From positions 62,001-126,000 of IMG/VR virus record IMGVR_UViG_3300017991_000001: a stretch of DNA of 64,000 bases. The stretch is one strand, 5' to 3'. A model generated the notes under the pieces. It worked only from the letters and a program-made list of their open reading frames with translations. It was not told where the DNA came from and did not search any database. Positions 2,318 to 37,975 of this stretch are shown piece after piece. The position numbers were made by a program, and so were the translations under genes. How positions within the stretch are numbered: the first letter of the stretch is position 1; each line of letters begins with the position of its first letter.

Positions 2318-2665
2318 ATGGTTCCAAAGACGGTTAAGGATCACGGGCTGGTGAATTGCGTGCAGGTGACGCTGTGCCCGGGCAACGGCACGCAGTACGA
2401 GCTGATCTTCTTCGGTCCGCTCATTGGGTCGTTTGACTTCGGCGCCCTCGGGGCGACCGGCGAGGACGACGCACAATGGTACATGGTCACCTGCAGCATC
2501 GGCAGGCGGACCATGCTGCTGAGAGGCAGGGGCGCGTTGGCGCTGGACTACGTGAAGGAAAAGCTGGGCCTGAAGCACGATGACGACGTCGTGCAGGTCA
2601 CCAAGGGTATCGGCGAGTTCCTGGATCGCCCCTACCAGAAACAGGACGGGACATGGTCGGAGTAG
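2318..2665 (+). CDS. Hypothetical protein
   Basis: AGGAGAGG RBS then ATG; overlaps next gene. Confidence 0.65.
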   Translation: MVPKTVKDHGLVNCVQVTLCPGNGTQYELIFFGPLIGSFDFGALGATGEDDAQWYMVTCSIGRRTMLLRGRGALALDYVKEKLGLKHDDDVVQVTKGIGEFLDRPYQKQDGTWSE

Positions 2666-3120
2666 TCAACTTCACCGGGGCGGACGTGGAGGTGTTCAAC
2701 CGCCACTTCAGGGACCACCGCCTCGGTTTCGAGAGGATGTACCGCCTGCTCAGCTGCTACAAGTGCGGCAGCCCGCTGGGGTATTTCCTGGGCACCAGGG
2801 AGGACAACGACAAGGCGCTCTTCCTGGAGCTGGACTGGTGCCGCACGTTCGGCGGCGCCCACACCCCCAAGAACGGCACCCGCATCAACATCGAGGAGTG
2901 CATGTTCTACGAGGTGGAGAAGTGCCTGTGCGAGGCCTACGGCTCGCGCCCGGCCTTTCGCATCGTGCCCACCCCGATGGCGGGCTTCGCCGCCTTGATG
3001 AACGGCTTCCCCATGACCAAGGCAGCGCTGCTGGAGTTCGACTTGGACGGGTGGGACCTGGGCGAGAAGCTGGATAACCTGAATACGAAAACCGATGCCG
3101 GCATCGAAAAGGAGACGTGA
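2653..3120 (+). CDS. Dispersed member of paralog family A (CxxC/CxC)
   Basis: HFRDH..RMYR..CYKC..PLGYF...CLC...ALLEFDLDGWDL matches the 16.7-21.6 kb array consensus. Confidence 0.7.
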   Translation: MVGVVNFTGADVEVFNRHFRDHRLGFERMYRLLSCYKCGSPLGYFLGTREDNDKALFLELDWCRTFGGAHTPKNGTRINIEECMFYEVEKCLCEAYGSRPAFRIVPTPMAGFAALMNGFPMTKAALLEFDLDGWDLGEKLDNLNTKTDAGIEKET

Positions 3121-3620
3121 TGATCTACGTGGAAGCACCCAAGTATCGCTTGACCGGGAAGCCCAGGACGATCTTCCTGGCCGGGGGCATCACCAACTGC
3201 CCCGACTGGCAGTCTGCCATGGTCGAATCATTGAATCATAAGCACTGCATGTCCGACGTGATCGTGTTCAACCCGCGCCGGGAGAACTTCCCCATCCACG
3301 ACCCCGAGGCGGCCAATGAGCAGATCAAGTGGGAGCACCACTACCTGTACGGCGTGGACGCCGTGGTGTTCTGGTTCGCGCGGGGCTCGCTCAACCCGAT
3401 CGTGCTCTTCGAGTACGGCAAGGAGTTGGGCCGGCGCGACGGCAAGCACCCCAAGCAGTGGAAGAAACTGTTCGTGGGCTGTGACCCCGAATACGAGCGC
3501 GTTGACGACGTGGTCATTCAGACGCGCCTCCACGAGAAGCAGATGGGCGTGGAGCCGATGCCGATATCGAACAGCCTGGACGGCGTCATCGACCGCATCG
3601 TCGACTGGTGCCAGGAATAG
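3120..3620 (+). CDS. Nucleoside 2-deoxyribosyltransferase-like protein
   Basis: IFLAGGITNCPDWQ, FNPRR, QIKWE, VVFWF, PIVLFEYG. Confidence 0.85.
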   Translation: MIYVEAPKYRLTGKPRTIFLAGGITNCPDWQSAMVESLNHKHCMSDVIVFNPRRENFPIHDPEAANEQIKWEHHYLYGVDAVVFWFARGSLNPIVLFEYGKELGRRDGKHPKQWKKLFVGCDPEYERVDDVVIQTRLHEKQMGVEPMPISNSLDGVIDRIVDWCQE

Positions 3621-15935: not shown

Positions 15936-16089
15936 ACGTTGGAAGGTACGCAGGAGCGTCTGGCCGTATCCCGACGGGTACGCGGTCTACGACGCGAAGG
16001 CGAAAGTGGTTCTCGATTCAGGGTTGTCTCACGAGGAGGCACAAACCTTGTGCGACCGGATGAACGAGGAAGAGCGCGATGGCGAGTAA
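15925..16089 (+). CDS. Small hypothetical protein (54 aa, not in ORF track)
   Basis: MASKRWKVRRSVWPYPDGYAVYD...CDRMNEEERDGE fills the gap and overlaps both neighbours. Confidence 0.55.
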   Translation: MASKRWKVRRSVWPYPDGYAVYDAKAKVVLDSGLSHEEAQTLCDRMNEEERDGE

Positions 16090-16414
16090 GGGTTTCAAGC
16101 TGCTGCCGCCCAAGCCCGGCGTCTGCCAGGAGTGCGCGGTGGACCACAAGCCGGGCGAGCCGCACAACCCGGGCAGCATGTACTACCAGTATAAGTTCCA
16201 CGGGGAGCACGGGCGCTGGCCCACCTGGAAGGACGCCATCGCCCACTGTGAGCCCGAGCTGCGCGAGGCGCTCAAGGAGGAGCTGATCCTCATGCAGGTC
16301 TGGGACCCCAAGTGGGACCAGCCCGAAGGCGAGGTGCCGGACGTGATGCCGGCCAACGACGGTTCGATCGGGACCGTGACAATCGTGTCGACGGAGGACA
16401 AAGAGGATGACTGA
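16079..16414 (+). CDS. Conserved-looking phage protein
   Basis: LLPPKPGVCQECAVDH...PHN..SMYYQYKF..EHGRWPTWKDAIAHC. Confidence 0.65.
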   Translation: MASKGFKLLPPKPGVCQECAVDHKPGEPHNPGSMYYQYKFHGEHGRWPTWKDAIAHCEPELREALKEELILMQVWDPKWDQPEGEVPDVMPANDGSIGTVTIVSTEDKEDD

Positions 16415-16694
16415 CGGCGACGGTACGCCGGCCAGCGCGCTGGCCGACGAGCTGGTTGCGAAGTTCGTGTTCGAGCCTGACGGCAAGGGCGACTTCCACT
16501 GCGAGACGGGGGAGCATTACCTGGCGGATAAAGTTGCCCGGCATATGGGGACCGACGCCGACCTTGTCGAGTCGTTCGCGAACATCTTCTTCAACCGCGT
16601 CATGGAGCGGTTCATGGAGCCACACTCCGAGCTGCACGCCAAGTGCCTGAAGCTGGTGGAGGAAATGAAGGAGAAGGAGGATGCCGACAATTAG
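16407..16694 (+). CDS. Hypothetical protein
   Basis: Intact ORF with RBS. Confidence 0.55.
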   Translation: MTDGDGTPASALADELVAKFVFEPDGKGDFHCETGEHYLADKVARHMGTDADLVESFANIFFNRVMERFMEPHSELHAKCLKLVEEMKEKEDADN

Positions 16695-17040
16695 CATGAG
16701 GGCTGCCGGGCCCGGTACGTTGCGGGAGCACCCCATCGTACAGCACTTCCTGAAGCATTACCGTTCGCCGCATTTCTATACGCTGAGGACGTGCACGCGC
16801 TGCGATTATCAGATCGGGTATTTCGTCGACGAGAACGATCGCCTGTTCTACGACAGCGGCTGTGAGTGCACCTACCACAACGGCCCGAACATCGAGCCGC
16901 GCAGTTGGGAGATGCTGGTGGAGTACTTCCGTGCGCACCAGCCGGAGATGGACCTGCTGCTGGCCCTGAACATCGACCGGGCCGGCAACGACAATCCGAT
17001 TGCGGAGGATGACGAACCCGAAGGGGAAGACGATGAATGA
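16681..17040 (+). CDS. Family A paralog 1 (CxxC/CxC)
   Basis: HFLKHY..FYTLRTCTRC..IGYF...CEC...W..L...DLLLALNID. Confidence 0.7.
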   Translation: MPTISMRAAGPGTLREHPIVQHFLKHYRSPHFYTLRTCTRCDYQIGYFVDENDRLFYDSGCECTYHNGPNIEPRSWEMLVEYFRAHQPEMDLLLALNIDRAGNDNPIAEDDEPEGEDDE

Positions 17041-17251
17041 CGACGTCTGCTGGCTGGTCACCGTGCTTCACGACGGGCGATTGCTCAAATGCGCCGTGAA
17101 GTTCAAGCGCGACAGCGTGCCCGGCGACATGGTCAGGTATCCTACGGAGTGGCGCACGGAGGTCGGAGAGAGGCTGTTGCCCGAGCACGTCAGGTCCGCG
17201 GGTCCGATCGTGGCCGTCGAGGAGATCTTCGAGGTGCACGTGCGTGGATGA
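17033..17251 (+). CDS. Hypothetical protein within array A
   Basis: No family motif; overlaps both neighbours. Confidence 0.5.
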   Translation: MNDDVCWLVTVLHDGRLLKCAVKFKRDSVPGDMVRYPTEWRTEVGERLLPEHVRSAGPIVAVEEIFEVHVRG

Positions 17252-17633
17252 CAAGATGAGGGCGGTCTTGAGCTACATTGAGGAGCGCGTCGCTTCCAGG
17301 AACCTGGAAGAGGAAGTGGAGTGGTTCAAGAGGCGCCAACGGGCGGCCGAGATGGTTCCGGCGCTGAAGGACTTGCTGGTCAGGGAGGAGGCGTGGCTGT
17401 ATCGCGTGACTGGCTGTACGGCCTGCTATAGCCACTGCAAGTTTCACATTCCCAGCCTCCGCAGGAAAGAGGAGCCTTCCCTGTTCGCGAGTTTGTGCAA
17501 CTGTCACCAGTCCAACCTCATTGTGCTGGGATGGGAGGAGGTGGCGATGTTCTTCCTGAACCACCCCGGGCTGCTGGACCTGTACACGGCGTTCCAGATG
17601 GACGCCGTGGACGTAGAGGAAGCGAATGTCTGA
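17244..17633 (+). CDS. Family A paralog 2
   Basis: LYR..CTAC...CNC...WEEV...DLYTAFQMDAVDVEE. Confidence 0.7.
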   Translation: MDDKMRAVLSYIEERVASRNLEEEVEWFKRRQRAAEMVPALKDLLVREEAWLYRVTGCTACYSHCKFHIPSLRRKEEPSLFASLCNCHQSNLIVLGWEEVAMFFLNHPGLLDLYTAFQMDAVDVEEANV

Positions 17634-18057
17634 CCACTTGAAGAGTTTGCCGTGGTGGGAAGTTGAGCGGCTTTCACGGAAGTTGAGCGTAATGGCGCGG
17701 CGCCACTTCTCGGCGCACCGCCAGGGACGGCTCTACGCGCTCGAGCGTTGCAAGGAGTGTGGGGTGGCCGGAAAGGGGTGGTACATTGCCCTGAACGGGG
17801 AGCCGGTTTACCAGGACCGGTGTTTCTGTACGTTGAAGGGGGAGCGCAAGGACGACGTACATCGGGCGATGTGGGCCCACGTGGGCGATTTCCTGCTCCG
17901 GCACCCGCACCTGGCGGACATGCTGTTCGCGTTCGACATGGACGCCGTGGAAGTGGAGGAAGCCGATGTTTGCTCCGAAGCACAGCGGGTCCCCGAGGCG
18001 GCGGGGGCGGCCCAAGTTCGAGAAGATCATCACGCCCAAGTTCACCAAGGACGTTGA
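17626..18057 (+). CDS. Family A paralog 3
   Basis: HF..H..RLY..RCKEC...CFC...W...DMLFAFDMDAVEVEE. Confidence 0.7.
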   Translation: MSDHLKSLPWWEVERLSRKLSVMARRHFSAHRQGRLYALERCKECGVAGKGWYIALNGEPVYQDRCFCTLKGERKDDVHRAMWAHVGDFLLRHPHLADMLFAFDMDAVEVEEADVCSEAQRVPEAAGAAQVREDHHAQVHQGR

Positions 18058-18418
18058 GGAGCTCAAGAAGTGGGACACGGACATACGGGATATCCTCACG
18101 GACGACTCGATCATCCGTCAGTTCAGGGCCGAGGACCTGGCTCCGAGACTGCGGGAGCATTTCGAGAAGCACCGCCTTAGGCGTCTTTACCGCACGCACC
18201 GGTGCCCGCGCTGCAACGTGGCCGTCGGGTTCTTCCTGCCGGCCAAGGGCGAGCAACTGCGGGCGTCGTTGCGTTGCCATTGCGTGCTGAAGGGGGCACG
18301 TGACAAGTCGGCGCCGACCACGTTCGCGAACCTGGCCGATTTGCTGTTGGATCACAAGCGCGAGCTGGATGCGCTGCTGGCTTTCGACATGGACCTGATT
18401 GATCTGGAGGAAGCGTGA
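17966..18418 (+). CDS. Family A paralog 4
   Basis: HFEKH..RLYRTHRCPRC..VGFF...CHC...ALLAFDMDLIDLEE. Confidence 0.75.
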   Translation: MFAPKHSGSPRRRGRPKFEKIITPKFTKDVEELKKWDTDIRDILTDDSIIRQFRAEDLAPRLREHFEKHRLRRLYRTHRCPRCNVAVGFFLPAKGEQLRASLRCHCVLKGARDKSAPTTFANLADLLLDHKRELDALLAFDMDLIDLEEA

Positions 18419-18762
18419 GCGTTCTGAAACGAATGCATGACAACGAGGGTGTGATAAACGCCCGGTGGGAGCTGGTCGACGCCCTGGTGAACCACTTCTA
18501 TCTTCATCGCGTGGACAACATGTACAGGACCGGCCGGTGCTCGTGCGGACAGCCCTACGGCTACGTGATGAATTCGCACGGACAGCTGAACTTCAAGGAG
18601 AGTTGCGTGTGCAACGAGAGCCCGATACGGGCCATGAAGAAGGTGCTCGCCCACACCTGGAGCGACCTGGCGGCCCTGCTCTACGGGAAGCAGCAAGAGC
18701 TGTCGATGCTGTTCGACTTTGACATGGACCTGCTTGATCTCAAGGAGGGCAACGGCGATTAG
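18415..18762 (+). CDS. Family A paralog 5
   Basis: HFYLH..NMYRTGRCSC..YGY...CVC...W...MLFDFDMDLLDLKE. Confidence 0.75.
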   Translation: MSVLKRMHDNEGVINARWELVDALVNHFYLHRVDNMYRTGRCSCGQPYGYVMNSHGQLNFKESCVCNESPIRAMKKVLAHTWSDLAALLYGKQQELSMLFDFDMDLLDLKEGNGD

Positions 18763-19072
18763 CCTGGTACGCGAGAAGTGGCGTGTGTCCCAGTTGTTGA
18801 AGGCGCATTTCGAGAAGCACCGGGTGAACAGGATGTACCGCGTGGGGCGGTGCGAGAAGTGCCGGAAGCCATACGGGTATCTGCTCACCACCCACGCGCT
18901 GTTGTTCCTGGAGCGGTGCAAATGCTGCCAGAACAAGCGCCGGGCCGCGAGGACGAAGTATGCGCACAGTTTCGTGTGGATGGCCGGGGAGATGATGAGC
19001 AAGAAACGGGAGCTGTCGATGTTGCTCGACTTCGACATGGACCTGCTTGATCTGGAGGACGAAGGGCGTTGA
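18758..19072 (+). CDS. Family A paralog 6 (possible ATT start)
   Basis: HFEKH..RMYRVGRCEKC..YGY...CKC...MLLDFDMDLLDLED; start inferred 9 nt after AAGGAGG. Confidence 0.7.
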   Translation: MSLVREKWRVSQLLKAHFEKHRVNRMYRVGRCEKCRKPYGYLLTTHALLFLERCKCCQNKRRAARTKYAHSFVWMAGEMMSKKRELSMLLDFDMDLLDLEDEGR

Positions 19073-19416
19073 GCAGCGTAAGCAAGGATGGTTGGGACCT
19101 GGCGTTCAAGCTGTTGAGGCACTTCCACGCTCACAGGATGAACAGGATGTACCGCACGGGCCGTTGCGACGCATGCAATTCTCCTTACGGGTATGTTCTG
19201 GAGGAGAAGAAGGAGAACGGCAAGCGGTGGAACTTGTTCTTCCGCGAGACTTGCGAGTGCTGGCGCGACGGGTTGCGCCTGGGCCGGAAGGGTATGGTGC
19301 ACAGCTGGTTCGACATCGCCAACGAGCTGCAGGACAGGGAACAGGAGCTTCACATGCTGTTCGACTACGACTTGGACCTGGTGGATCTGCAAGATGGCAC
19401 GCTTTCGCGAGCCTGA
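19069..19416 (+). CDS. Family A paralog 7
   Basis: HFHAH..RMYRTGRCDAC..YGY...CEC...MLFDYDLDLVDLQD. Confidence 0.75.
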   Translation: MSSVSKDGWDLAFKLLRHFHAHRMNRMYRTGRCDACNSPYGYVLEEKKENGKRWNLFFRETCECWRDGLRLGRKGMVHSWFDIANELQDREQELHMLFDYDLDLVDLQDGTLSRA

Positions 19417-19771
19417 CAAGTGGCAGGTGGGTGTACAGCTCTGCGCTCACAGCATGGAGCATTGTCTGAAGGGCCGTTTCTACCGATGGCGCCGGTGCGA
19501 GGACTGCGGGGAACCGATCGGGGTGTGGCTGCACTCCTGCTTCGACCCGAAGTACAGGGACGAGTGTACGTGTGATGTCGGGGCGGCCCGCCGCCTTACG
19601 ATCGGGAATAAGATGCTGTGGGGCGAGGTGGCGGAGGTGATCATGCGCACCCCGGCTGCGATCGACGCCTTCCTGGCGTATGACCTGGACATTCTGGACT
19701 TGGAGGAGGGCTGTGAAACAAACCGAGCTGACGCGCGGCTTGAACACGCTGCACAGCGACAAGACGTATAG
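19394..19771 (+). CDS. Family A paralog 8
   Basis: RFYRWRRCEDC..IGVW...CTC...W...AFLAYDLDILDLEE. Confidence 0.75.
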   Translation: MARFREPDKWQVGVQLCAHSMEHCLKGRFYRWRRCEDCGEPIGVWLHSCFDPKYRDECTCDVGAARRLTIGNKMLWGEVAEVIMRTPAAIDAFLAYDLDILDLEEGCETNRADARLEHAAQRQDV

Positions 19772-20171
19772 GCAGACCTCAACTTGGGAATTGAGGCCGG
19801 AAGGTACGGCTAAGCGCGCGACGCGGATTCTGCGTGTGCGGGATTACTTCATCCACAACTACACGCACCGTTCGCGGGTTTTCATGCGGGACGTCAAGGC
19901 CCGCTCGTTCAAGCGCCGTTGCGTCAACTGCGGCGCCATACTGTACGTCTTCGTCTACAGGGCGTTCCCGTACATGGTGGGTTGCTATCACGGCAATGCG
20001 AAGGAGTTCGACAAGATCCCGGGCATCAAGTATGGGCGCTTGTATCGTCTCTTTTGGGAGCAGGTGGGTCGCTGGCTTGAGGACGACAAGTTCTTCGATC
20101 TGTTGCTGCTGGCGGGTACCGATCCGGTGGACCTGGAAGACGATGGCGCTGAAACCACCGACGTCGTGTGA
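19713..20171 (+). CDS. Family A paralog 9
   Basis: YFIHNY...RRCVNC...GCYH...W...DLLLLAGTDPVDLED. Confidence 0.7.
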   Translation: MKQTELTRGLNTLHSDKTYRQTSTWELRPEGTAKRATRILRVRDYFIHNYTHRSRVFMRDVKARSFKRRCVNCGAILYVFVYRAFPYMVGCYHGNAKEFDKIPGIKYGRLYRLFWEQVGRWLEDDKFFDLLLLAGTDPVDLEDDGAETTDVV

Positions 20172-20478
20172 CGTCTTCACGATGCGCGTGCGGGATAGTT
20201 TCATGGCACGTCGCATGGATGGTCGCGTGTTCCGCACACGGCGCTGTCGGCGCTGCAAAGAGGCAGTGGGCTTCTTCGTGTACCCGGCCGAGCCCTTTGA
20301 GGTCGTGGCACCGCAGCTTCACTTTCGTCCTTGCCAGTGCGGAGGGGCGAAGCAGAACTGGCCTGTGTTATGGGAGGCGCTGTCCGCGTGGGCATCGAAG
20401 AACCCGAAGGCGTGGGACTTGTTTCTGGCGTTCGACATGGACATGCTGGATCTGGCGGATGCCGACGTCAAAGGCTGA
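20143..20478 (+). CDS. Family A paralog 10
   Basis: RVFRTRRCRRC..VGFF...CQC...W...DLFLAFDMDMLDL. Confidence 0.75.
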   Translation: MALKPPTSCDVFTMRVRDSFMARRMDGRVFRTRRCRRCKEAVGFFVYPAEPFEVVAPQLHFRPCQCGGAKQNWPVLWEALSAWASKNPKAWDLFLAFDMDMLDLADADVKG

Positions 20479-20896
20479 CATCACGCGCGAGCTGCGCAGG
20501 CTGATGCGGGACGCATCGAGGTATGGACGCTACTACATGGAGCACCACCTCTCGGAGAACGAGACCTTTCTCAAGGTGGCGCAGTACTTCTACAGCCACT
20601 TCGAGTTCAGCAGTTTGCATCGCAAGGTGATCCTGAGGGACGTGAAGCGCAGGTCCTACCGGACCGACCGCTGCGAGATCTGCGGTGAGCCGGCCTACTG
20701 GTTCATCTACGGCGGGGTGCTGTTCGCGTTCCGGTGCTACCACGGCGACCGCAAGCGCCACCCGTCCAAAGGGGGCGGGCACGTGTACAAGGAGCGGTGG
20801 CGGTGTATTTGGCGTTATCTGGAGGACGACAGGGTGCGGGACATGCTGTTGTCGTTCGGGATCGACCAGGCGGAGTTGGAAGATGGCGCTGACTAA
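20459..20896 (+). CDS. Family A paralog 11
   Basis: RSYRTDRCEIC...RCYH...W...DMLLSFGIDQAELED. Confidence 0.7.
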   Translation: MPTSKADITRELRRLMRDASRYGRYYMEHHLSENETFLKVAQYFYSHFEFSSLHRKVILRDVKRRSYRTDRCEICGEPAYWFIYGGVLFAFRCYHGDRKRHPSKGGGHVYKERWRCIWRYLEDDRVRDMLLSFGIDQAELEDGAD

Positions 20897-21314
20897 CGAA
20901 CCCTCGACGTGGGAGCTTGGCGAGGCAGACTGGTGGTTCGACAAGCGGGATCTGGAGAACGACCCGCTCCTGCGGTATTTCGTCGAACACTACGACATAT
21001 GGCACCCGGCGATGCCGCCCGCGGACCTGGTCGGGCGGTCGTACCGCATTCTCATCTGTACCCGGTGCGGCGAAGTTCATCGCTGGTTCGTCTTCCAGGA
21101 GAGGACGCTTTGGCGGTACGGGTGCAAGTGCAGCTCGCCGAATCAGGCGTTTCGGGCGTTTCGGGAGCGCCTGACGACGCTGAGGAACTACTTCGAGGCG
21201 AACCCGCGGCTGACGGACCTGCTGCTGGGTTTCGGGATCGATGCCGTGGAGGCGAACGGAGGGGAACGCGAGGATGTTCTCGGATCAGCAGATAGCAGGC
21301 AGCTCCTTCATTAG
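20883..21314 (+). CDS. Family A paralog 12
   Basis: YFVEHY..RSYR..CTRC...CKC...DLLLGFGIDAVE. Confidence 0.7.
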   Translation: MALTNEPSTWELGEADWWFDKRDLENDPLLRYFVEHYDIWHPAMPPADLVGRSYRILICTRCGEVHRWFVFQERTLWRYGCKCSSPNQAFRAFRERLTTLRNYFEANPRLTDLLLGFGIDAVEANGGEREDVLGSADSRQLLH

Positions 21315-21642
21315 GACCTACAAGGACAACCCCATCTTCCGACACTTCATGAAGCACTACATCTACGGCGGCAGAATCAGCCCGAAGAGGTCGTATCGGC
21401 TGGCGCGTTGTCCGGGGTGCAAATGTTGCAGGGGTTGGGTGGTCAACGTTCACGGGCACGCCTTCTACTACGCGTGCAGATGCTGGAACATAAAGAACGA
21501 ACTCGTGAACGAGTCCTGGGATTACATATTCAGGATCTTCGACCACAACCCGCCGCTCAAGGACTTTCTGTTGGCGTTCGGGATGGACGCCGTGGCCGTG
21601 GAGGAGATGCATGAAACTTCGGACACCGAGGTAAAGGGATAA
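21274..21642 (+). CDS. Family A paralog 13
   Basis: HFMKHY..RSYRLARCPGC...CRC...W...DFLLAFGMDAVAVEE. Confidence 0.7.
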   Translation: MFSDQQIAGSSFIRTYKDNPIFRHFMKHYIYGGRISPKRSYRLARCPGCKCCRGWVVNVHGHAFYYACRCWNIKNELVNESWDYIFRIFDHNPPLKDFLLAFGMDAVAVEEMHETSDTEVKG

Positions 21643-21983
21643 TGGGCAAGCACCGCTACAACCGACCCACGCGCCTCCCCGTACTGACCGGGGACGCGTT
21701 CTTGCGCAGGCGGCTCTCCATCGAGCCGCACTGCCATTGGTGCAGGAGGAAGGTCTTCAACCCGCGCAACAAGGCGCAGGTGGATGCGGCCCTCGTGGCC
21801 GCGGTGGACTACAAGGACCCCCGGGGCGACTCCGACGACGAGCGCAACTGCGTGCTCGTCTGTACGGAGTGTAAGGAGGCCCGGTCCAAGCTGGACCAGT
21901 CTGCCTTCGGGAAACGTATCCAGAGTCTGCGAGCAAACCATGCCGAAAAAGAAGAAGAAGGCAGCAGCAGCGCAGGAGAGTAA
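21642..21983 (+). CDS. HNH endonuclease-like protein, probably degenerate
   Basis: CHWC...VDYKDPRG...NCVLVCTEC (canonical DH and CN appear as DY and CK). Confidence 0.55.
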   Translation: MGKHRYNRPTRLPVLTGDAFLRRRLSIEPHCHWCRRKVFNPRNKAQVDAALVAAVDYKDPRGDSDDERNCVLVCTECKEARSKLDQSAFGKRIQSLRANHAEKEEEGSSSAGE

Positions 21984-22266
21984 GAACCCCAACGAGAACT
22001 GTCTCGAAGGCAGACGCTGTCCGAAGTGCGGCAGCTACGGCCCGTTCACGGTGCTCACCCAGCAGTGGGTGACGCTCACCGACGACGGGACCGACGATCC
22101 CCCCAAGGATCATGGCGACGTTGAATACGACGAGGACGCGCCCGCCAGCTGTCAGGGCTGGCCGGCCGCGAGCGAGGACGAGCCCGTCCAGTTCGCGGAG
22201 GAGTGCGACTTCGAGGGAAAGTGGGGCGATTTTCGCGACAAGGAGGTCAGTGATGCCTCCACGTGA
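21940..22266 (+). CDS. Hypothetical phage protein with CPKC
   Basis: NCLEGRRCPKCGS.GPF...C...CDFEG. Confidence 0.6.
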   Translation: MPKKKKKAAAAQESKNPNENCLEGRRCPKCGSYGPFTVLTQQWVTLTDDGTDDPPKDHGDVEYDEDAPASCQGWPAASEDEPVQFAEECDFEGKWGDFRDKEVSDAST

Positions 22267-23053
22267 GAACCCGTGCTACCTGAAGCTCTACGGGGGCAAC
22301 CCGCACCCCGACAAGACGGATGAGAACCACACGGTCCTGCTGGGCCCGATCACCGACCTGTCGGCCAACAGCCACAGCGTTGAAGTCCGCATGGGTAACA
22401 ACGGCCTGTGCGAGATCTGGTACGACCGCGGCAGGCTGTTCTACGACCGGCACTGGTACCTCGGGTTCGAGGTCATCAGCGAGCTGGCGGCGGCCAGGAG
22501 CACGCTGAGCGTGCAGCCACTGTCGCAGGAGATGGCGGCGCCGCCGAACGACCGCACCAAGCACCCGAATGACACGCACGCCGACAAGCGGCTGATCATG
22601 ATGGTGGGGCTGCCGTGTTCGGGTAAGAGCACGATAGCGAGCAACCTGTCCAAGCACTTCTTCGCCCCGATCGTGTGCCCGGACATCGTGCGCTGGTGCA
22701 TGCACGGGGAGCGAAGCAACAAGCGCATGGAGCCGATGGTATGGTCATGTGTGCATACCATGGTGGAGTCCCTGTTCAGGGTGGGGCACAACTATGTCAT
22801 TCTGGACGCCGTCAACACGATGCGTTGGCACCGTGACCAGTGGAAGGACGATCGCTGGAAGCGCGTCTACATGGTGATGCCGGTCAGCGCCGAGAGGTGC
22901 ATGCGGCGAGCCAAGACGTGTAACGACATCGTGATACAGCCCGTGATCGAGCGTATGGCGGCCACCATGGAGGCGTTGGAGGAAGACGAGAAGGACGATC
23001 CCGAGTTCCAGAGGACGCTGGACTCTTTTCTGGAGGCGGCCGAAAGGCTGTAG
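22253..23053 (+). CDS. P-loop kinase (polynucleotide kinase/AAA_33-like) with N-terminal unknown domain
   Basis: LIMMVGLPCSGKST Walker A; IVCPDIVR; VILDAVN...R. Confidence 0.8.
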   Translation: MPPRENPCYLKLYGGNPHPDKTDENHTVLLGPITDLSANSHSVEVRMGNNGLCEIWYDRGRLFYDRHWYLGFEVISELAAARSTLSVQPLSQEMAAPPNDRTKHPNDTHADKRLIMMVGLPCSGKSTIASNLSKHFFAPIVCPDIVRWCMHGERSNKRMEPMVWSCVHTMVESLFRVGHNYVILDAVNTMRWHRDQWKDDRWKRVYMVMPVSAERCMRRAKTCNDIVIQPVIERMAATMEALEEDEKDDPEFQRTLDSFLEAAERL

Positions 23054-32450: not shown

Positions 32451-32660
32451 ATGCCGTACATCCTGAAGTTCCACTCACCCCGCGACGGTGTGCTGTCCAC
32501 CACGCACATCGACGCGGAGGACGACCCGGACGCCATGGACCAGGCGCTGGAGCGTATCAACAGACGTACCGCGGAAGGCCTGGAGGGGGATCACGTACTG
32601 ATCGGACCAGGGGGCCGCAAACTCAAACTCGATCTTGTCGGCTGCGCGCCGGCGGACTGA
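32451..32660 (+). CDS. Small hypothetical protein
   Basis: Intact ORF. Confidence 0.5.
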   Translation: MPYILKFHSPRDGVLSTTHIDAEDDPDAMDQALERINRRTAEGLEGDHVLIGPGGRKLKLDLVGCAPAD

Positions 32661-32679
32661 CCACCACGGAAAATCGAAT

Positions 32680-33279
32680 ATGTCTCGCGACGAGTTTCAG
32701 ATCCTGTTTAACCAGGAGCCAACCGCCCGCGATTACTTTCCAGAGGGGCTCGACGAGAACCCGCTGGACCTGTTCGTCAAGGCGTTGGCGAGCGGGAACT
32801 ACGCGGAGACCGGGTTGTCGGGGCTTCGCCGCAAGGGCACGATTTCGGACCTACCGGCGCACGCCAACGCGACCCAGATTGTAGACTACCAGGACAAGCA
32901 CGGACGGCTGCCCCGCCGCATTTCCAAGACACTGCGCACGGCTGAGGGAGGAAACGTCTTTATTCATGGCTTGTGGTTCTACTCGGCGACGGGCGTGCTG
33001 TGCGACACGTTTTTCCACGCTGCAGGTGAGAAGCACTGGGACGCCAGCTGGGACGAGGAAAGCTTCTTTTGCACGCGTGCTCCAAGGGCGCCTGGCAGAC
33101 ACACGCCGTTCCTGCACTCGGAAGAACATAACACGGAGCGTCCTCCGTTTGCTGTCGCGTGGTGGTGGGAGCGGCTGACGAAGCTGCCGTTGCCGCCGAT
33201 GATGAATTATATGGTGAACAAGGAGCTGACCTTCTCGCAACTGGCCGACTTGCTGACGGTGGGCGCGCCATGGACATAA
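32680..33279 (+). CDS. Family B paralog 1 (GVLC...GAPW)
   Basis: YSATGVLCD...WWW..LPL...FSQLADLLTVGAPW. Confidence 0.75.
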   Translation: MSRDEFQILFNQEPTARDYFPEGLDENPLDLFVKALASGNYAETGLSGLRRKGTISDLPAHANATQIVDYQDKHGRLPRRISKTLRTAEGGNVFIHGLWFYSATGVLCDTFFHAAGEKHWDASWDEESFFCTRAPRAPGRHTPFLHSEEHNTERPPFAVAWWWERLTKLPLPPMMNYMVNKELTFSQLADLLTVGAPWT

Positions 33280-33713
33280 AGAAGGACTCGCCCCTGATGG
33301 CGTGGATCAAGGCGCTGGGTGACGACAGCTACATCACGCAGTGGAAGGATTACGGCTACCACCCGCCCCAGCTGCGGACCGTGATCTACGAGCCGTCGGG
33401 GACGGGCAAGGAGGCGACACACATCCTCTGGTCGCCGATGGGCGTCCTGGCCGACGCGTTCGTGCAGCGGCACTGCAAGGCGCCGCTGTACTCGATGTGG
33501 GTCGACCGTTGGATGCGGGTCAGCCCCGTGGGCGGCCCGCACCTGTCCTTTGACGAGGCGTGGCCGCTGCCCTGGCCCATCGAGACGTGGTGGAAGAACT
33601 GGCATGCCGACCTTCCTTTCAAGAAAGTAGGGGACTACATGTTTGAACCGCAAGCGAACTTCCGGCAGTTGGCCGACCTGTTGGCTGTGGGGGCACCGTG
33701 GGTGAGCCACTAG
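33270..33713 (+). CDS. Family B paralog 2
   Basis: WSPMGVLAD...WW...DLPF...FRQLADLLAVGAPW. Confidence 0.75.
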   Translation: MDIKKDSPLMAWIKALGDDSYITQWKDYGYHPPQLRTVIYEPSGTGKEATHILWSPMGVLADAFVQRHCKAPLYSMWVDRWMRVSPVGGPHLSFDEAWPLPWPIETWWKNWHADLPFKKVGDYMFEPQANFRQLADLLAVGAPWVSH

Positions 33714-34219
33714 AGTCGTGGATACTCAGCCTGTCGACCAAGGAGTACGAGCAGGAGATGGATTCCCCCATGCTGCGGCGCATCTACAGGGAGGCTGTCG
33801 CCACGAGCGACAACGTGTGCTACCGGGGCCAGCTGCTGAAGAAGGGCGAGAAGATTGTGATCCCGGACAACATTGATCGGGTCGGCGACTCGGCTTTCTG
33901 GGATATGCAGAGGCATCTGGTGACGCTCGGCAAGGTCATCAAGTTCACGGCTTCCGGCGTGCTGTGCCAGCAGTGCCTGAAGTACGCGCCGATGCCGACG
34001 CGCGGCGGCATGTGGGACGGGCTCGAGTTCAGCTGTAAGGGACTCTTCTGTCAGGAGTCGCCGCATCTGCATATGTGGCCGCTGCCATGTGTGGTGCGGG
34101 CCTGGTGGAGCGACTACGAGGATCTGCCGCTGGAGCCGCTGAAACCGTACCTGGAGAACATCAAGATGTCGTTTGACGAGCTGGCTACGCTGTTAGCGGT
34201 GGGCGCGCCATGGGCATGA
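33698..34219 (+). CDS. Family B paralog 3
   Basis: FTASGVLC...WW..DLPL...FDELATLLAVGAPW. Confidence 0.75.
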   Translation: MGEPLESWILSLSTKEYEQEMDSPMLRRIYREAVATSDNVCYRGQLLKKGEKIVIPDNIDRVGDSAFWDMQRHLVTLGKVIKFTASGVLCQQCLKYAPMPTRGGMWDGLEFSCKGLFCQESPHLHMWPLPCVVRAWWSDYEDLPLEPLKPYLENIKMSFDELATLLAVGAPWA

Positions 34220-34647
34220 CGTATTGGGACTACCAGCCGCTGGGACTCTGGATCGAAGGGCTGCGTAACGTCTACAAGGAGATCGATTACGGTGACGACG
34301 CGCCGCCCGATCGCGTGCCGTTGTACACCGGCCACCCGGCGGAGCACGCTTTGAGCTTGAGGAGGTTTTCACCTGCCGGCGTGTTGTGTGCCCTTCTAAC
34401 CCTAAAGGGGCCGTCGGTGGGCGCGCATATGAGCAACGGGGAATTCAAATGGGTGGAAGGTTGCGCCGACCGGCCCGTCTACCGTACAGCGAAGTGGGCG
34501 GACGAAATGCCGGAGCCCGTCATTGCGTGGTGGCACAAGTCTCACGACGACCTGCCGTTCGAGAAGCTGATGCCGTTCCTGACCGACCCGCACTTGCGGT
34601 TCAAGCCGTTCGCTGACCTTTTGGAGATGCACGCGCCATGGGCGTGA
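34210..34647 (+). CDS. Family B paralog 4
   Basis: FSPAGVLC...WW..HDDLPF...FKPFADLLEMHAPW. Confidence 0.75.
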   Translation: MGMTYWDYQPLGLWIEGLRNVYKEIDYGDDAPPDRVPLYTGHPAEHALSLRRFSPAGVLCALLTLKGPSVGAHMSNGEFKWVEGCADRPVYRTAKWADEMPEPVIAWWHKSHDDLPFEKLMPFLTDPHLRFKPFADLLEMHAPWA

Positions 34648-35288
34648 GAGACGAGATCCTGGAGAAGGTGTTCAAGGGCAGCTCCGAGCAGCACGCGATG
34701 CGCTTGAAGCTGGTGACGCCCATGGAGGTGTGGGTGCAGTCGCTGCGCGGACGGCTTGATAACGAACACCGGACGGTATACGAACAGGCCCACACCACGC
34801 AGCTGCGCACGCGTGGCAGTTTCACCAGAGGCGCGGCCAGCGCGATAGCAGACTTCACGAGGGTCAAGATGAAGGAAGAGGGTTTCTGGCGGAAGATCAT
34901 GCCGCCCACGCCTATCGGCAAGTCCACAACGATGGCGCAGACTACAGTGAAGCAGGCGTACAGGAGCACGCCGAACGTGAACGGTGACGTCTTCGGTTTG
35001 GACATATGGGACTACTCGGCGCTGGGCGTGCTGTGCGACCTGTATCTGCGTTTCGAGCGCCAGCACAGGGGCGACGCCTCGTGGCGGGGTAACGAGTTCC
35101 AGTGGTTGGTCAAGGGCAAGTTGAGGAGATCGAATTCATGCAAGAAGGTTCCCACGCCGGTAAGAATGTGGTGGGAACGGCATCACGGGGAACTTCCGTT
35201 CAGGAACCTGAAGGCCTACCTGCGCAACCCGTATCTGAAGTTCGAACAGTTCGCGGACCTGCTGGAGATGCACGGGCCATGGACCTGA
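34638..35288 (+). CDS. Family B paralog 5
   Basis: YSALGVLCD...WW..HGELPF...FEQFADLLEMHGPW. Confidence 0.75.
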   Translation: MGVRDEILEKVFKGSSEQHAMRLKLVTPMEVWVQSLRGRLDNEHRTVYEQAHTTQLRTRGSFTRGAASAIADFTRVKMKEEGFWRKIMPPTPIGKSTTMAQTTVKQAYRSTPNVNGDVFGLDIWDYSALGVLCDLYLRFERQHRGDASWRGNEFQWLVKGKLRRSNSCKKVPTPVRMWWERHHGELPFRNLKAYLRNPYLKFEQFADLLEMHGPWT

Positions 35289-35890
35289 AAGGTTACAAGC
35301 CGCTGCCGCCACTGACGCTGTGGGTGGATGCGCTGCGCAGCAAGGGATATAACCCTACGGACGCGAAGGCGCTCCGCAAGAAACGCAGGATTACGATCGA
35401 CGGCGTCGAGCTCGTCTCGGGCGATAATGTGATGGCCCACGACTCGGGCAAGACGATGTACATACAAGACTGGGCATACTCGCCGATGGGGGTGCTGTGC
35501 GATCTCTACCTGAACTACGTGCCGCTTTCCTACCGGTCCAAATGGCGCTGCGCGTGGAAGGGGCAGTACTTTCGTTGGATGGTCCGTGGCAAGTGGAGCA
35601 GGCAAAAGTCCAGGCATCAGATGCCCACGCCCATCTACGAGTGGTGGAGCAAGCACCACCGCAAGCTGAAGATCGAGCCGCTGAGGCCGTTCCTGAAGGA
35701 CAAGGACCTCAGGTTTGACATGTTTGCGGACCTGCTGGAATTGCACGCGCCGTGGTCGATGGACCCGGCGCTGCTGGGCTACGAAGCTGACCGGCCCAAG
35801 CCTTTGCCTTTTTCCACGTTGCCTCTTGACAGGCATATCCGCGGACCTCGCTTCCGCTGTTTAGAGAAACCCGAGGGAGTAGAGGAGTGA
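35279..35890 (+). CDS. Family B paralog 6
   Basis: YSPMGVLCD...WW..H...FDMFADLLELHAPW plus a tail. Confidence 0.75.
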   Translation: MDLKGYKPLPPLTLWVDALRSKGYNPTDAKALRKKRRITIDGVELVSGDNVMAHDSGKTMYIQDWAYSPMGVLCDLYLNYVPLSYRSKWRCAWKGQYFRWMVRGKWSRQKSRHQMPTPIYEWWSKHHRKLKIEPLRPFLKDKDLRFDMFADLLELHAPWSMDPALLGYEADRPKPLPFSTLPLDRHIRGPRFRCLEKPEGVEE

Positions 35891-36351
35891 TCGGGATCGA
35901 TCACCAGGGGCCGTTGCAGTGGTGGTTGAAGGAGATGAAGAAAGGGTACAAGGACCACACCCGACACGGGTACTACAGTCGCCCGCCGCTATGCCGGACT
36001 GTTGAAACCTTTCGGACGTATTCCCCCGGCGGTGTTTTGTGCCAGGCGTACAGCGGCGTTATGGGCACGCATGGGTTCAGCTACGCCTACGAGGGGCATG
36101 GTCGCCTCTACCCGGAATGTGTACCGTTCGTGTGGCGGACCCGGTGCGGCCGTACGTGTGGCAGCATCTTCAGCGTGCCCAAACCGGTGCGCGAGTGGTG
36201 GGCGAGCCACTACTACAGCGAGCTGCCGTTCAGCGCGTTGATCCCCTATCTCGAAGACAAGAACCTTACGATCGACGCCTTCTCGGTGCTCCTGATGACG
36301 GGGGCGCCGTGGCTGGGTTGTGAGGACAAACCGTTGAAAGGATCGAAATGA
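35887..36351 (+). CDS. Family B paralog 7
   Basis: YSPGGVLC...WW...ELPF...FSVLLMTGAPW. Confidence 0.75.
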   Translation: MIGIDHQGPLQWWLKEMKKGYKDHTRHGYYSRPPLCRTVETFRTYSPGGVLCQAYSGVMGTHGFSYAYEGHGRLYPECVPFVWRTRCGRTCGSIFSVPKPVREWWASHYYSELPFSALIPYLEDKNLTIDAFSVLLMTGAPWLGCEDKPLKGSK

Positions 36352-36524: not shown

Positions 36525-36792
36525 GGAAGACCTGAAAGAGGCGCTGGCCGGCATGTGCTACCAGTTCGCCTACCGCGGCAAGACGAAAGAGGGCCGCCTG
36601 ACCATCTGGACGGGCGGCCTTTCTGCACTGGAGCTGGCGTTTCAGGAGCTGGGGTGGGAGGACCCTCACCCTTACCCGGAAGGGGAATGCCAGAACGAGG
36701 GCTGCTACAACGAGGCGACCTGCGGGAAGCCTACACCCGAGGGTTACAAGTTCCTGTGTGGGAGCTGCGATGCCAAAAAACACTCTCCGTAG
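36514..36792 (+). CDS. Hypothetical Cys-rich protein
   Basis: GGLSALE..F..LGW; C...C...C...CGSC. Confidence 0.6.
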   Translation: MTTEEDLKEALAGMCYQFAYRGKTKEGRLTIWTGGLSALELAFQELGWEDPHPYPEGECQNEGCYNEATCGKPTPEGYKFLCGSCDAKKHSP

Positions 36793-37060
36793 CGTCAAAA
36801 TCACGTTCGACCGGAAGGATCGCTGCATCGACGAATACGGTGTTTGGGTGTGGTGGTACCGGACTTCTAGCCGCTTTGCTATCCAGCAGGCCGATAGTGA
36901 CAACCACGTCGACCCGGACAGAATGATCGGTATCCCACGTAACCTCCGGGTCCTGAAGGCCCTGATCAAGGAGCTGCAGTGGCACGTGACGGACCTGGAG
37001 GCGGACCAGCTGACAAAGGGGACGCTCGATGGAGATACCACCGATGCCGGCGGCACGTAA
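36770..37060 (+). CDS. Family C paralog 1 (EADQL)
   Basis: IGIPRN..VLK...TDLEADQLTKGTLD. Confidence 0.7.
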   Translation: MPKNTLRSVKITFDRKDRCIDEYGVWVWWYRTSSRFAIQQADSDNHVDPDRMIGIPRNLRVLKALIKELQWHVTDLEADQLTKGTLDGDTTDAGGT

Positions 37061-37370
37061 GCGCAAGCGCGTGAACTTCGACGTCAAGATCCCCGTAACA
37101 GACAATCATACGGAGGGGGTGATCGGGGGCTTGCGGCTCACCGACTTCCTTGCCGACGAGCACACACCCGTAGGGAAGGTGTGGTTTACGCCCATAGTCA
37201 GGTGGACGTACCCGAGAAGCGGCAAGAAGAGCGAGACGCGCGGAAACATACTGTCGATCCCGCGCGACCCGAAGGCCCTGCGCAAGATCGCGGCGTTTCT
37301 GCTGGACGTGGCCGACGACGCGGAGGCCGATCAACTGACGAAAGGAACACTCGATGCCGAACCAGATTGA
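37029..37370 (+). CDS. Family C paralog 2
   Basis: LSIPRD..ALR...DDAEADQLTKGTLD. Confidence 0.7.
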   Translation: MEIPPMPAARKRKRVNFDVKIPVTDNHTEGVIGGLRLTDFLADEHTPVGKVWFTPIVRWTYPRSGKKSETRGNILSIPRDPKALRKIAAFLLDVADDAEADQLTKGTLDAEPD

Positions 37371-37629
37371 GCGGGTGATGTTGCCGCTGACGAGGGACGG
37401 TGAGCCGTTCATGCTCGAAGTGCTGGACGACGAGGCGCGCGAACGGGTGTCTTTCCGTCCGGTCATAATGGACAAGAACACGTACGCGAACTACGACCTC
37501 GAGCGGTACGGCGAGATGGTAACCGTACCGCGGGTTGCGCGCGTGTTGCGCGAGATCGGACAGATCCTGCTGGACAGGGCGACGGACATCGAAGCCGATC
37601 AACTGGCGAAAGGGACACTGGATGACTGA
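37354..37629 (+). CDS. Family C paralog 3
   Basis: VTVPRV..VLR...TDIEADQLAKGTLD. Confidence 0.7.
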   Translation: MPNQIERVMLPLTRDGEPFMLEVLDDEARERVSFRPVIMDKNTYANYDLERYGEMVTVPRVARVLREIGQILLDRATDIEADQLAKGTLDD

Positions 37630-37975
37630 GAGCATACCGTATCCGTACGAGTACAACATAACGGTGGGTGGCATGCTGGTGGACACGTGTCACCGGATGG
37701 TTGGTCTGCCCGGACACTTCGAGGTTCGGATCACGCCGTTTTACAGGGGCGGATCGTACGTTGACCGGGGAAACAACGCGTCGCCGATCACCATCCCTCG
37801 AAAGAAGGAGGTGCTGGAGCGGTTCATCAAGGTGTTCCAGGCGGCGATAACGGACATAGAGGCCGAGGCGCTGGCAAGGGGGTTGGAGGAGATCAGGTTC
37901 GAGCACACCGAGACGGGAATCTGCCGGAAGCGTGACCCCGAGACCGGACAGGAGCTGAGAAGGGAGAGCGGATGA
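37622..37975 (+). CDS. Family C paralog 4
   Basis: ITIPRK..VLE...TDIEAEALARG. Confidence 0.7.
   Translation: MTESIPYPYEYNITVGGMLVDTCHRMVGLPGHFEVRITPFYRGGSYVDRGNNASPITIPRKKEVLERFIKVFQAAITDIEAEALARGLEEIRFEHTETGICRKRDPETGQELRRESG

What the first reader, a model, noticed from the sequence alone, without database searches (positions are those of the whole stretch)
16681..21642. Tandem array of 13 diverged Zn-binding paralogs (family A) of unknown function
Seen: 13 genes in 5 kb with consensus [HY]F..H...R[MLS]YR..RCxxC...G[YFW]....CxC (CYH in two)....W..[LV]....D.LLxFDMD..DLEE, highly diverged between motifs. A 14th copy lies at 2653-3120. I recognise no family. Inferred: a conserved Zn scaffold plus acidic, hydrophobic C-terminal docking tail, with variable surfaces, suggests a repertoire of host-interaction or anti-defence proteins under diversifying selection.
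Basis: partly seen in the sequence, partly recalled or inferred. Interest (0 to 1): 0.75.

Follow-up and report, generated by a model that had tools for sequence, protein, structure and literature searches.

The report
Expanded zinc-protein family in jumbo phage
An uncultured 211-kb phage carries 13 back-to-back, translationally coupled copies (plus one solo copy) of a previously undescribed small zinc-binding protein with no recognisable relatives of known fold or function; the array grew from a single founder gene, and what the proteins do is still unknown.

Summary
Window 16681-21642 holds 13 homologous + strand genes of 104-152 aa, and a 14th lies at 2653-3120. A leave-one-out profile recovers every copy at E 5e-8 to 3e-26. 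Identical contigs occur in several independent metagenomes. The window is part of a complete 211,084-bp jumbo-phage record.

The family has no Pfam, PHROG, NCBIfam or PDB match. Two confident AlphaFold models share one topology: a helix, a three-stranded sheet carrying the CxxC...CxC/H site, then three helices. Nothing in PDB, AFDB, BFVD or ESM Atlas resembles it beyond weak zinc-ribbon likeness.

Only about 10 foreign close relatives exist among 1.84 billion protein clusters. Related contigs carry 1, 8 or a different subset of copies, and one junction is chimeric. The array therefore grew from an A1-like founder by unequal recombination in the conserved tail.

That tail is modelled as two structured helices. 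Its last codons are also the ribosome-binding site and start of the next gene. Ortholog dN/dS is 0.24-0.6 in all pairs but one (0.96), like the flanking genes, so selection is purifying and gene-wide diversifying selection is not shown.

The function is untested. The most likely role is a repertoire of small accessory binding proteins.

The parts
2653..3120 (+). A0, solo 14th copy (155 aa). It has a ~30-aa insertion between CxxC and CxC and lies next to a nucleoside 2-deoxyribosyltransferase-like gene.
   Evidence: orthologs P0019 and P0021
16681..17040 (+). A1, first copy and founder-like (119 aa). It has the sequence bridge to the wider ~90-aa phage family; its tail is degenerate and very acidic.
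   Evidence: single-copy ortholog in L008
17033..17251 (+). Unrelated 72-aa ORF inserted between A1 and A2. It is coding-like (GC3 0.85) and absent from L001.
17256..17633 (+). A2 (125 aa; alternative GTG start at 17244)
   Evidence: (P0015)
17626..18057 (+). A3 (143 aa). It runs 92 nt past the usual stop position into A4; the same arrangement is seen in L001.
17966..18418 (+). A4 (150 aa). N-terminal residues 13-57 are a copy of residues 111-155 of the phage's major-head-protein-like gene.
18415..18762 (+). A5 (115 aa). CxC replaces CxxC. It is absent from L001 and from a co-occurring variant.
18758..19072 (+). A6 (~104 aa). The start is uncertain: ATT 18758 or CTG 18764 after AAGGAGG, canonical TTG at 18719 or 18734, and the public gene call starts at GTG 18785.
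   Evidence: P0009
19069..19416 (+). A7 (115 aa). This is the modelled copy, pLDDT 90.8.
19394..19771 (+). A8 (125 aa). It sits on a long branch and is absent from L006 and L001.
19713..20171 (+). A9 (152 aa, GTG start after GGAGGAGG). C-Y-H variant.
   Evidence: P0004
20143..20478 (+). A10 (111 aa; the public gene call starts at 20203). It sits on a long branch and is absent from L006 and L001.
   Evidence: (P0014)
20459..20896 (+). A11 (145 aa). C-Y-H variant. This is the second modelled copy, pLDDT 83.3.
20883..21314 (+). A12 (143 aa)
21274..21642 (+). A13, last copy (122 aa). It is followed by a weakly HNH-like gene at 21642-21983.
   Evidence: (P0012)
17576..21613 (+). Eleven copies of a 53-nt tail/junction repeat, 60-77% identical. 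Each encodes the D.LL.F.MD..DLEE helices and also carries the Shine-Dalgarno sequence and start codon of the next gene.
   Evidence: no conserved RNA structure

Best explanation
This is a lineage-specific birth-and-death expansion of a previously undescribed ~100-aa phage protein, from 1 copy to 8 to 13.

The genes lie in a long + strand block of small unannotated genes, which I read as an early or accessory region. They have no spacers. Each start codon lies inside or just after the previous gene's last helix, and the LEE/LED codons (CTGGAGGAA and the like) supply the ribosome-binding site. The 13 proteins are therefore probably made together by translational coupling.

All copies keep one scaffold: helix 1, a three-stranded sheet whose hairpin CxxC and following CxC/H form a four-ligand, presumably zinc, site, then three helices ending in an acidic one. 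Almost every other position differs between copies, as do the N-terminal extension (30-79 aa) and net charge.

Copies are gained and lost by unequal homologous recombination in the conserved 53-nt tail/junction.

The most likely role is a repertoire of small accessory binding proteins of the host-takeover or counter-defence kind, each aimed at a different target.

Shown: homology, anatomy, copy-number variation, purifying selection and a consistent predicted fold.

Inferred: zinc binding, co-expression, binder function and diversity of targets.
For: Homology and count.

The array is real and identical in independent runs.

All 12 junctions overlap. A GGAGG-type site lies in the tail codons at 7 of them.

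Two divergent copies give the same topology, at pLDDT 90.8/pTM 0.79 and 83.3/0.80.

Conserved columns are the 4 ligands, core hydrophobics, and H18, R26, R29, D95 and D103. Spacing is conserved.

Core charge ranges from -3 to +15 while the tail is always -4 to -10.

Expansion history:
- L008 has one A1-like copy in the same synteny.
- L063 has one distant copy beside the conserved upstream gene.
- L001 has 8 copies.
- L006 lacks A8 and A10 and has a chimeric A7-body/A8-tail junction.
- A co-occurring variant lacks A5.
- In the tree the A1 clade lies next to the outgroup, and orthologs pair across phages.

Purifying selection: dN/dS 0.24-0.59 in 11 of 12 ortholog pairs, against 0.25-0.81 for neighbouring genes.

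The neighbourhood is made of small genes without Pfam or PHROG matches.

Recombination-driven amplification of a counter-defence gene is documented in phage T4, for tifA (10.1101/2022.04.14.488369).
Against: Nothing here tests function. There is no partner, no expression data and no host.

Gene-wide dN/dS below 1 gives no sign of an arms race. Most duplications predate the split from L001, so this is not a recent accordion.

Relatives of the wider family sit beside DNA polymerase A and NDK. The weak structural echoes are of nucleic-acid-binding zinc ribbons. Both fit a replication or nucleic-acid role at least as well.

The timing of expression is assumed from gene order only. No promoters or terminators stood out above chance.
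Confidence: 0.45

Rival explanations
1. The proteins are nucleic-acid-binding zinc-ribbon factors. They would be replication, recombination or transcription accessories or regulators, and the paralogs would recognise different DNA or RNA sites or structures.
For: The only, and weak, structural echoes are zinc ribbons of type IA topoisomerase C-termini and large serine recombinases, plus PC4/Pur-alpha-like ssDNA binders.

Conserved R.YR..R lies next to the metal knuckle.

Several cores are strongly basic, up to +15.

Wider-family members lie next to DNA polymerase A and NDK. The array lies next to a polynucleotide-kinase-like AAA_33 gene and a weakly HNH-like gene.
Against: All structural scores are at noise level: E >= 0.12, Z <= 3.5, TM <= 0.38.

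Half of the cores are neutral or acidic, and every copy carries an acidic helix.

Thirteen co-expressed regulators in one operon would be unusual.
Confidence: 0.2
2. The proteins are subunits of one hetero-oligomeric assembly, or packaged and ejected virion proteins. Translational coupling would set their stoichiometry, and the conserved C-terminal helices would be the shared assembly interface.
For: Every junction is coupled.

The conserved block is the C-terminal pair of helices.

A4 carries a 45-aa copy of the major-head-protein-like gene.

Giant phages are known to have paralogous families of ejection or head proteins (PMC5694885, abstract).
Against: The homodimer prediction scored 0.00, although the tool says this is no evidence either way.

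Copy sets differ between close relatives at 13, 8 and 1, which a fixed complex would not tolerate.

The array lies far from the structural module, among small accessory genes. Only one copy has the capsid-gene fragment.
Confidence: 0.1
3. The copies are largely neutral or decaying duplicates. The conserved tail would reflect only DNA-level constraints, namely the RBS and start of the next gene and a recombination substrate, not protein function.
For: The DLEE codons coincide with the Shine-Dalgarno sequence. That part degenerates where no paralog follows, in A0, A1, the L008 copy and P0021.

Two other arrays in the same phage also place the next gene's start inside their conserved C-terminal motif.

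A12 against its L006 ortholog gives dN/dS 0.96.
Against: All 14 reading frames are intact with coding composition.

dN/dS is below 0.6 in 11 of 12 ortholog pairs.

Orthologs are retained across phages.

The conserved block spans about 18 codons, far more than an RBS. Its LL.F..D part is kept in solo copies.

The junctions have no conserved RNA structure.
Confidence: 0.05

Closest known systems
Unnamed wider family of ~85-110-aa phage proteins (P0022, P0025, P0026, P0028, P0029, P0031-P0033; motif R.CS.C..P.GY...FD..CDCT...P.SW)
   Same: They have the same four ligand positions and spacing, and the same aromatic and Trp positions. A1 and its orthologs align to them along the whole core. The best ESM Atlas structural match is a 95-aa viral cluster, probably of this family, at TM 0.50/0.58.
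   Different: They are single-copy, or two domains fused in one protein. They lack the acidic FDMD..DLEE helices and the R.YR motif. They too have no Pfam or PHROG match and no known function.
Zinc-ribbon domains (type IA topoisomerase C-terminal ribbons PF01396/PF13368; large serine recombinase Zn_ribbon_recom PF13408)
   Same: A three-stranded antiparallel sheet with a Cys knuckle in the first hairpin. These domains recur as the top, though weak, structural matches.
   Different: The scores are at noise level. The second ligand pair is C-x-C/H directly after strand 3, not a second CxxC knuckle. There is an N-terminal helix and three C-terminal helices. No sequence match was found.
Recombination-driven gene amplification in viruses (T4 tifA amplification; poxvirus genomic accordions)
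   Same: Tandem copy-number change of an accessory gene by recombination between repeats (10.1101/2022.04.14.488369; PMC9973261 and PMC6115191, listed). Here a chimeric junction and presence/absence of single copies show the same process.
   Different: Those arrays are recent, near-identical copies that give a dosage effect. Here the copies are old, 15-44% identical to one another, each conserved with its ortholog, and fixed in the population.
Paralogous head or ejection protein families of giant phages (SPN3US, phiKZ-like)
   Same: Multi-member paralog families in jumbo phage genomes (PMC5694885, abstract).
   Different: Those are larger virion proteins within structural modules. Here the proteins are ~100-aa zinc proteins among small accessory genes, with no virion evidence.
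Small phage or bacterial zinc-finger regulators (DksA/TraR C4 finger PF01258; P2 Ogr/P4 Delta, from my own knowledge)
   Same: Small size, four-Cys site, phage-encoded.
   Different: PF01258 touches only A8, at E 0.006 and 17 bits against a cut-off of 24.9, over 13 residues. Ogr_Delta gave no hit. Ligand spacing and predicted topology both differ.

Membership tests
Any Pfam-A family | Score at or above the family's gathering threshold | tested here: not met
   All 14 copies plus 4 foreign relatives were scanned. The best hits were PF01258 at 17.0 bits (cut-off 24.9), PF03692 at 15.6 (23), PF20719 at 16.9 (21) and PF13451 at 15.4 (24).
Any PHROG or NCBIfam family | Significant profile match | tested here: not met
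   PHROGs: best E 0.14 for the ten copies scanned, A0-A9. NCBIfam: one member at E 0.046, all 14 scanned.
Proteins of known structure (PDB, by sequence and by fold) | Significant sequence or fold similarity | tested here: not met
   Profile against PDB sequences: best E 0.034, to an artificial ATP-binding zinc protein. Foldseek PDB: best E 0.27 for A7 and 0.49 for A11. VIA-align wide: best Z 3.5, second look 2.7. AFDB clusters: E 0.14. Swiss-Prot models: E 0.59. BFVD: E 0.12.
Zinc ribbon (structural class) | Two beta-hairpin knuckles, each giving two Cys ligands to one zinc | tested here: inconclusive
   The first pair, CxxC, lies in the strand1-strand2 hairpin as in a ribbon. The second pair, C-x-C/H, follows strand 3 and is not a classical knuckle. 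Metal binding itself is not testable with these tools.
Sliding-clamp-binding or SSB-tail-like docking peptides (idea raised from the D.LL.F and FDMD patterns) | An exposed, disordered terminal peptide, and a clamp partner | tested here: not met
   The segment is modelled as helices at pLDDT 93-96. The phage encodes no gp45-like or beta clamp. Docking to a host clamp was not tested.
Recent 'genomic accordion' amplification | Near-identical tandem copies | tested here: not met
   Paralogs are 15-44% identical at protein level. The only DNA repeat is the 53-nt junction, at 60-77% identity. Orthologs of 8 copies exist in L001.

The most novel reading that the evidence does not exclude
The array is a phage counterpart of the multigene host-range families of poxviruses and giant viruses. 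A fixed acidic C-terminal helix pair would plug every copy into one common hub, while 13 different bodies capture different host or defence proteins. A4's copied capsid-protein segment would serve as a decoy for capsid-sensing immunity. Together with two further arrays of the same build in this genome (families B and C), this would indicate a general way in which some jumbo phages manufacture binder repertoires, using a dual-use tail/RBS junction as the duplication module.
Probability: 0.15. Interest if true: 0.85.

Novelty: new variant of a known kind. Interest (0 to 1): 0.6.

Why it matters
Phage genomes are compact, and families with more than a few paralogs are rare. A fixed, 13-member, translationally coupled array is therefore unusual, especially with a traceable history from one copy to 8 to 13 and a confidently predicted fold that matches nothing known.

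It offers three things. First, a new small metal-binding scaffold that evolution has already diversified, which is attractive for structure and binder studies. Second, a natural case for studying how phages build gene repertoires by unequal recombination at a junction that serves both protein and translation. Third, a set of candidates for accessory or counter-defence functions in a jumbo-phage lineage that has no close cultured relative among the 50,697 phage records searched (nearest: Vibrio phages D181/D148/D69 and Salmonella phage Arash, 27-30% portal identity).

If the function turns out to be ordinary, for example a redundant nucleic-acid binder, the evolutionary anatomy still stands.

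Tried and rejected
1. Pfam, PHROGs and NCBIfam on all copies and on the wider family found nothing.

2. Word-indexed protein searches with two alignments returned only the window's own proteins and a few metagenomic ones, with no names. The exhaustive HMMER search gave 31 hits.

3. tblastn of A1 and P0031 against 50,697 phage records found no match. Pattern scans of IMG/VR and of 185,579 species' genomes found none. Two scans could not start because the alignments were too diverged. No copy was found in Vibrio phage D181 or Salmonella phage Arash.

4. Clamp-binding-motif idea: rejected for lack of a phage clamp, and because the segment is modelled as helical.

5. Homodimer prediction: score 0.00, which the tool declares uninformative.

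6. A structured RNA or Rfam element at the junctions: none.

7. Promoters or terminators bounding the array: not above chance.

8. A possible 15th copy (genome 26884-27465): rejected. It is a different Cys-rich ORF.

9. Assembly artefact: rejected.

10. The ESM Atlas feature search for A1 gave only unnamed clusters below the level at which a hit counts for more than a lead.


Full report
**Where the window lies.** The window is bases 62001-126000 of a 211,084-bp virus record with direct terminal repeats, rated complete. GC is about 62%, and nearly all genes are on the + strand, with GC3 of 0.8-0.9. A portal-like protein (57076-58935) is 27-30% identical to proteins of Vibrio phages D181, D148 and D69 and to the annotated portal of Salmonella phage Arash. 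No close cultured relative exists in the collection. This is therefore an uncultured jumbo phage. The record name seen later is Ga0180434_10000025.

**Checking the observation.** ORF listing and a motif scan show 13 consecutive + strand genes from 16681 to 21642, and a 14th at 2653-3120.
- In the alignment of the 14, both Cys of the first pair, the first Cys of the second pair, and one Asp of the tail are invariant.
- A profile of the alignment finds exactly these 14 places in the genome.
- With each copy left out in turn, a profile of the other 13 still finds it at E 5e-8 to 3e-26. The best unrelated ORF scores E >= 0.003. The recurring weak ORF is a different Cys-rich protein.
- Spacing is conserved. 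CxxC to CxC is 17-25 residues (52-58 in the A0 clade), and CxC to the tail Phe is 29-40.
- All copies have coding-type base composition.

A5 has C-x-C as its first pair. A coding-like but unrelated 72-aa ORF (17033-17251) separates A1 and A2. Real starts lie later than the longest ORFs.

**The array is not an artefact.** Seven public runs hold 94-100% of the sampled words. They are sediment metagenomes from 2018 and seawater metagenomes from 2021, from several studies. Contigs of four of them cover 16400-22000 with no differences.

**Junction anatomy.** All 12 junctions between successive copies overlap, by 4 to 92 nt.
- The next start codon lies within or just after the previous tail.
- At 7 junctions the LEE/LED codons spell a GGAGG-type Shine-Dalgarno sequence 5-10 nt upstream. 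Stops and starts often interlock as ATGA, GTGA or TTGA.
- The tail/junction is the only DNA-level repeat: 53 nt, 11 copies, 60-77% identity.
- It has no conserved RNA fold and no Rfam match.
- No promoter or terminator signal exceeds chance.

I infer one transcript and translational coupling. This was not tested.

**What the protein is.** Nothing matches in Pfam, PHROGs or NCBIfam at any curated or significance threshold.
- The best PDB sequence hit, E 0.034, is an artificial zinc-containing ATP-binding protein. This is a chance match of the R.YR..C..C stretch.
- AlphaFold2 with a 41-row family alignment models A7 at pLDDT 90.8 and pTM 0.79. The elements are helix 6-22, strands 27-32, 39-47 and 53-60, then helices 68-74, 80-87, 91-100 and 104-112.
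- The divergent C-Y-H copy A11 gives the same core topology plus N-terminal additions, at pLDDT 83.3 and pTM 0.80.
- CxxC lies in the first hairpin, and C-x-C/H directly follows strand 3. This resembles a zinc ribbon but is not a classical one.
- The tail is modelled as two helices. The invariant Asp lies in the turn between them, most simply read as a helix cap.

Fold searches found nothing:
- Foldseek PDB: E >= 0.27.
- VIA-align over 48,161 chains: best Z 3.5, below the tool's usual background. The second look gave Z 2.7.
- AFDB clusters: E >= 0.14. Swiss-Prot models: E >= 0.59. BFVD: E >= 0.12.
- ESM Atlas gave a 95-aa viral cluster at TM 0.50/0.58, probably the wider family. Recombinase and topoisomerase zinc ribbons followed at TM 0.36-0.38.

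The conserved columns are the four ligands, core hydrophobics (F19, Y28, W80, L97, L98, F100), and H18, R26, R29, D95 and D103. Core net charge runs from -3 to +15, while the tail is always -4 to -10.

**Relatives and history.** The exhaustive profile search of 1.84 billion cluster representatives gave only 31 hits at E <= 1e-3, with 17 at E <= 1e-10. Most of the strong ones are the window's own. About ten are foreign close relatives. The rest are ~85-110-aa proteins that share the core but lack the acidic helices. A1 and its orthologs align with these along the whole core. Those distant members are likewise unannotated and sit next to DNA polymerase A or NDK.

Related contigs show the growth of the array:
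- L008 has a single A1-like gene in the same synteny. It is directly followed by the weakly HNH-like gene, a zinc-ribbon gene and the AAA_33 kinase.
- L001 to L004 have eight copies: orthologs of A1, A2, A3, A4, A6, A7, A11 and A12.
- L006 runs A7, A9, A11, A12, A13. Its first gene has an A7 body and an A8-like tail, which is the footprint of recombination within the tail. A8 and A10 are missing.
- A minor co-occurring variant joins a diverged A4 directly to A6, so A5 is missing.
- Of 68 metagenomic loci that share the conserved upstream 111-aa gene, only the window's own contig and L001/L002 have arrays. One other locus, L063, has a single distant copy.

In the tree the A1 clade lies next to the outgroup, although root support is weak. 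Two clades correspond to the left and right halves of the array. Orthologs pair across phages, so most duplications are older than the split of these phages.

**Selection.** Nei-Gojobori dN/dS is 0.24-0.59 for 11 of 12 ortholog pairs, and 0.96 for A12 against L006, where there are few changes. Four flanking genes give 0.25-0.81. dS is 0.6-1.3 for most pairs and codon bias is strong, so the values are rough. They show purifying selection and no gene-wide excess of replacements. Site-level tests need more orthologs.

**Interpretation.**
- Firmly shown: a real, homologous, intact, conserved, tightly coupled 13+1 gene family of a new small protein type. It expanded from one founder by recombination at a junction that serves both protein and translation.
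- Inferred: zinc binding, co-expression, and a role as a repertoire of binding proteins.

I favour the accessory or host-interaction reading at about 0.45. The reasons are the location among small unannotated genes, presence/absence variation between close relatives, retention of each copy under purifying selection, and a fixed scaffold with divergent surfaces and charges. The nucleic-acid-binding alternative (0.2) rests on weak structural echoes and on neighbours. The complex or virion alternative (0.1) rests on the coupling and on A4's capsid-gene fragment. The neutral-duplicate alternative (0.05) is contradicted by selection and retention. A homodimer prediction was uninformative. The clamp-motif idea was dropped.

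**Comparison with known systems.** The process resembles recombination-driven amplification in T4 (tifA; 10.1101/2022.04.14.488369) and poxvirus accordions (PMC9973261 and PMC6115191). Here, however, the copies are old and diverged, not recent dosage copies. The protein belongs to no described family. Its nearest structural class is the zinc ribbon, and membership in that class is inconclusive.

**Verdict.** I rate this a new variant of a known kind, a virus multigene family, with interest 0.6.

Noticed in passing
window 32635-36351: A second tandem array ('family B'). It has seven + strand paralogs of about 145-262 aa with GVLCD, WW and a conserved C-terminal F..LADLL.VGAPW motif. The APW codons (CCATGG) contain the next gene's ATG. 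No Pfam or PHROG match for the three copies scanned.
   Followed up: partly
window 36758-38280: A third tandem array ('family C'). It has five small paralogs ending in D.EADQLTKGTLD. The next start codon again lies in the tail (CTGGATGAC). No Pfam or PHROG match for the two copies scanned.
   Followed up: partly
window 17966-18140 (A4 N-terminus); 34638-35288; 35102-35890; G000:C1:154870-155835 (L005:2871-3833): Pieces of the major-head-protein-like gene are copied into array members. That gene matches PHROG 2522 at E 3.6e-5. A4 residues 13-57 are 56% identical to its residues 111-155, and this piece is conserved in the L001 ortholog. By eye, shorter look-alike pieces also sit in two family B members.
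   Followed up: partly
window 17626-18057 / 17966-18418: A3 runs 92 nt past the usual stop position, overlapping A4's start in another frame. The same overlap is present in L001. The A4 frame is the better conserved one there.
   Followed up: partly
window 17033-17251: A coding-like 72-aa ORF (GC3 0.85) lies between A1 and A2. It is absent from the related contig L001, where A1 and A2 abut. No family match.
   Followed up: partly
window 16079-16414: The 111-aa gene upstream of the array carries motifs C.EC..HKP..PHNP.SMYYQYKF and WPTWKDA. It has 68 related loci in metagenomes, so it is a widespread unannotated protein family (seen mostly on unclassified metagenome contigs), far more common than family A.
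   Followed up: partly
window 21642-23053: A conserved trio lies downstream of the array in all relatives. It consists of a 113-aa weakly HNH-like protein, a small CxxC protein, and a 313-aa AAA_33/polynucleotide-kinase-like protein (Pfam E 6e-14; PHROG 505). The single founder copy in L008 sits directly in front of the same trio.
   Followed up: partly
window 3117-3620: The gene after the solo copy A0 is a nucleoside 2-deoxyribosyltransferase-like protein (PF15891, E 1.2e-14).
   Followed up: no
window 18719-18790: A6 has no canonical start codon at the expected distance from the AAGGAGG in A5's tail. The candidates are ATT 18758 or CTG 18764. The public gene call uses GTG 18785, which cuts off a conserved Trp-containing helix.
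   Followed up: partly
L082 (Salmonella phage Arash, OQ632216.1 130093-134670): In the distant cultured relative, the portal is followed by a large gene annotated as RNA polymerase beta subunit. The window's phage has a 2358-aa ORF at G000:C1:131428-138504 that was not examined.
   Followed up: no
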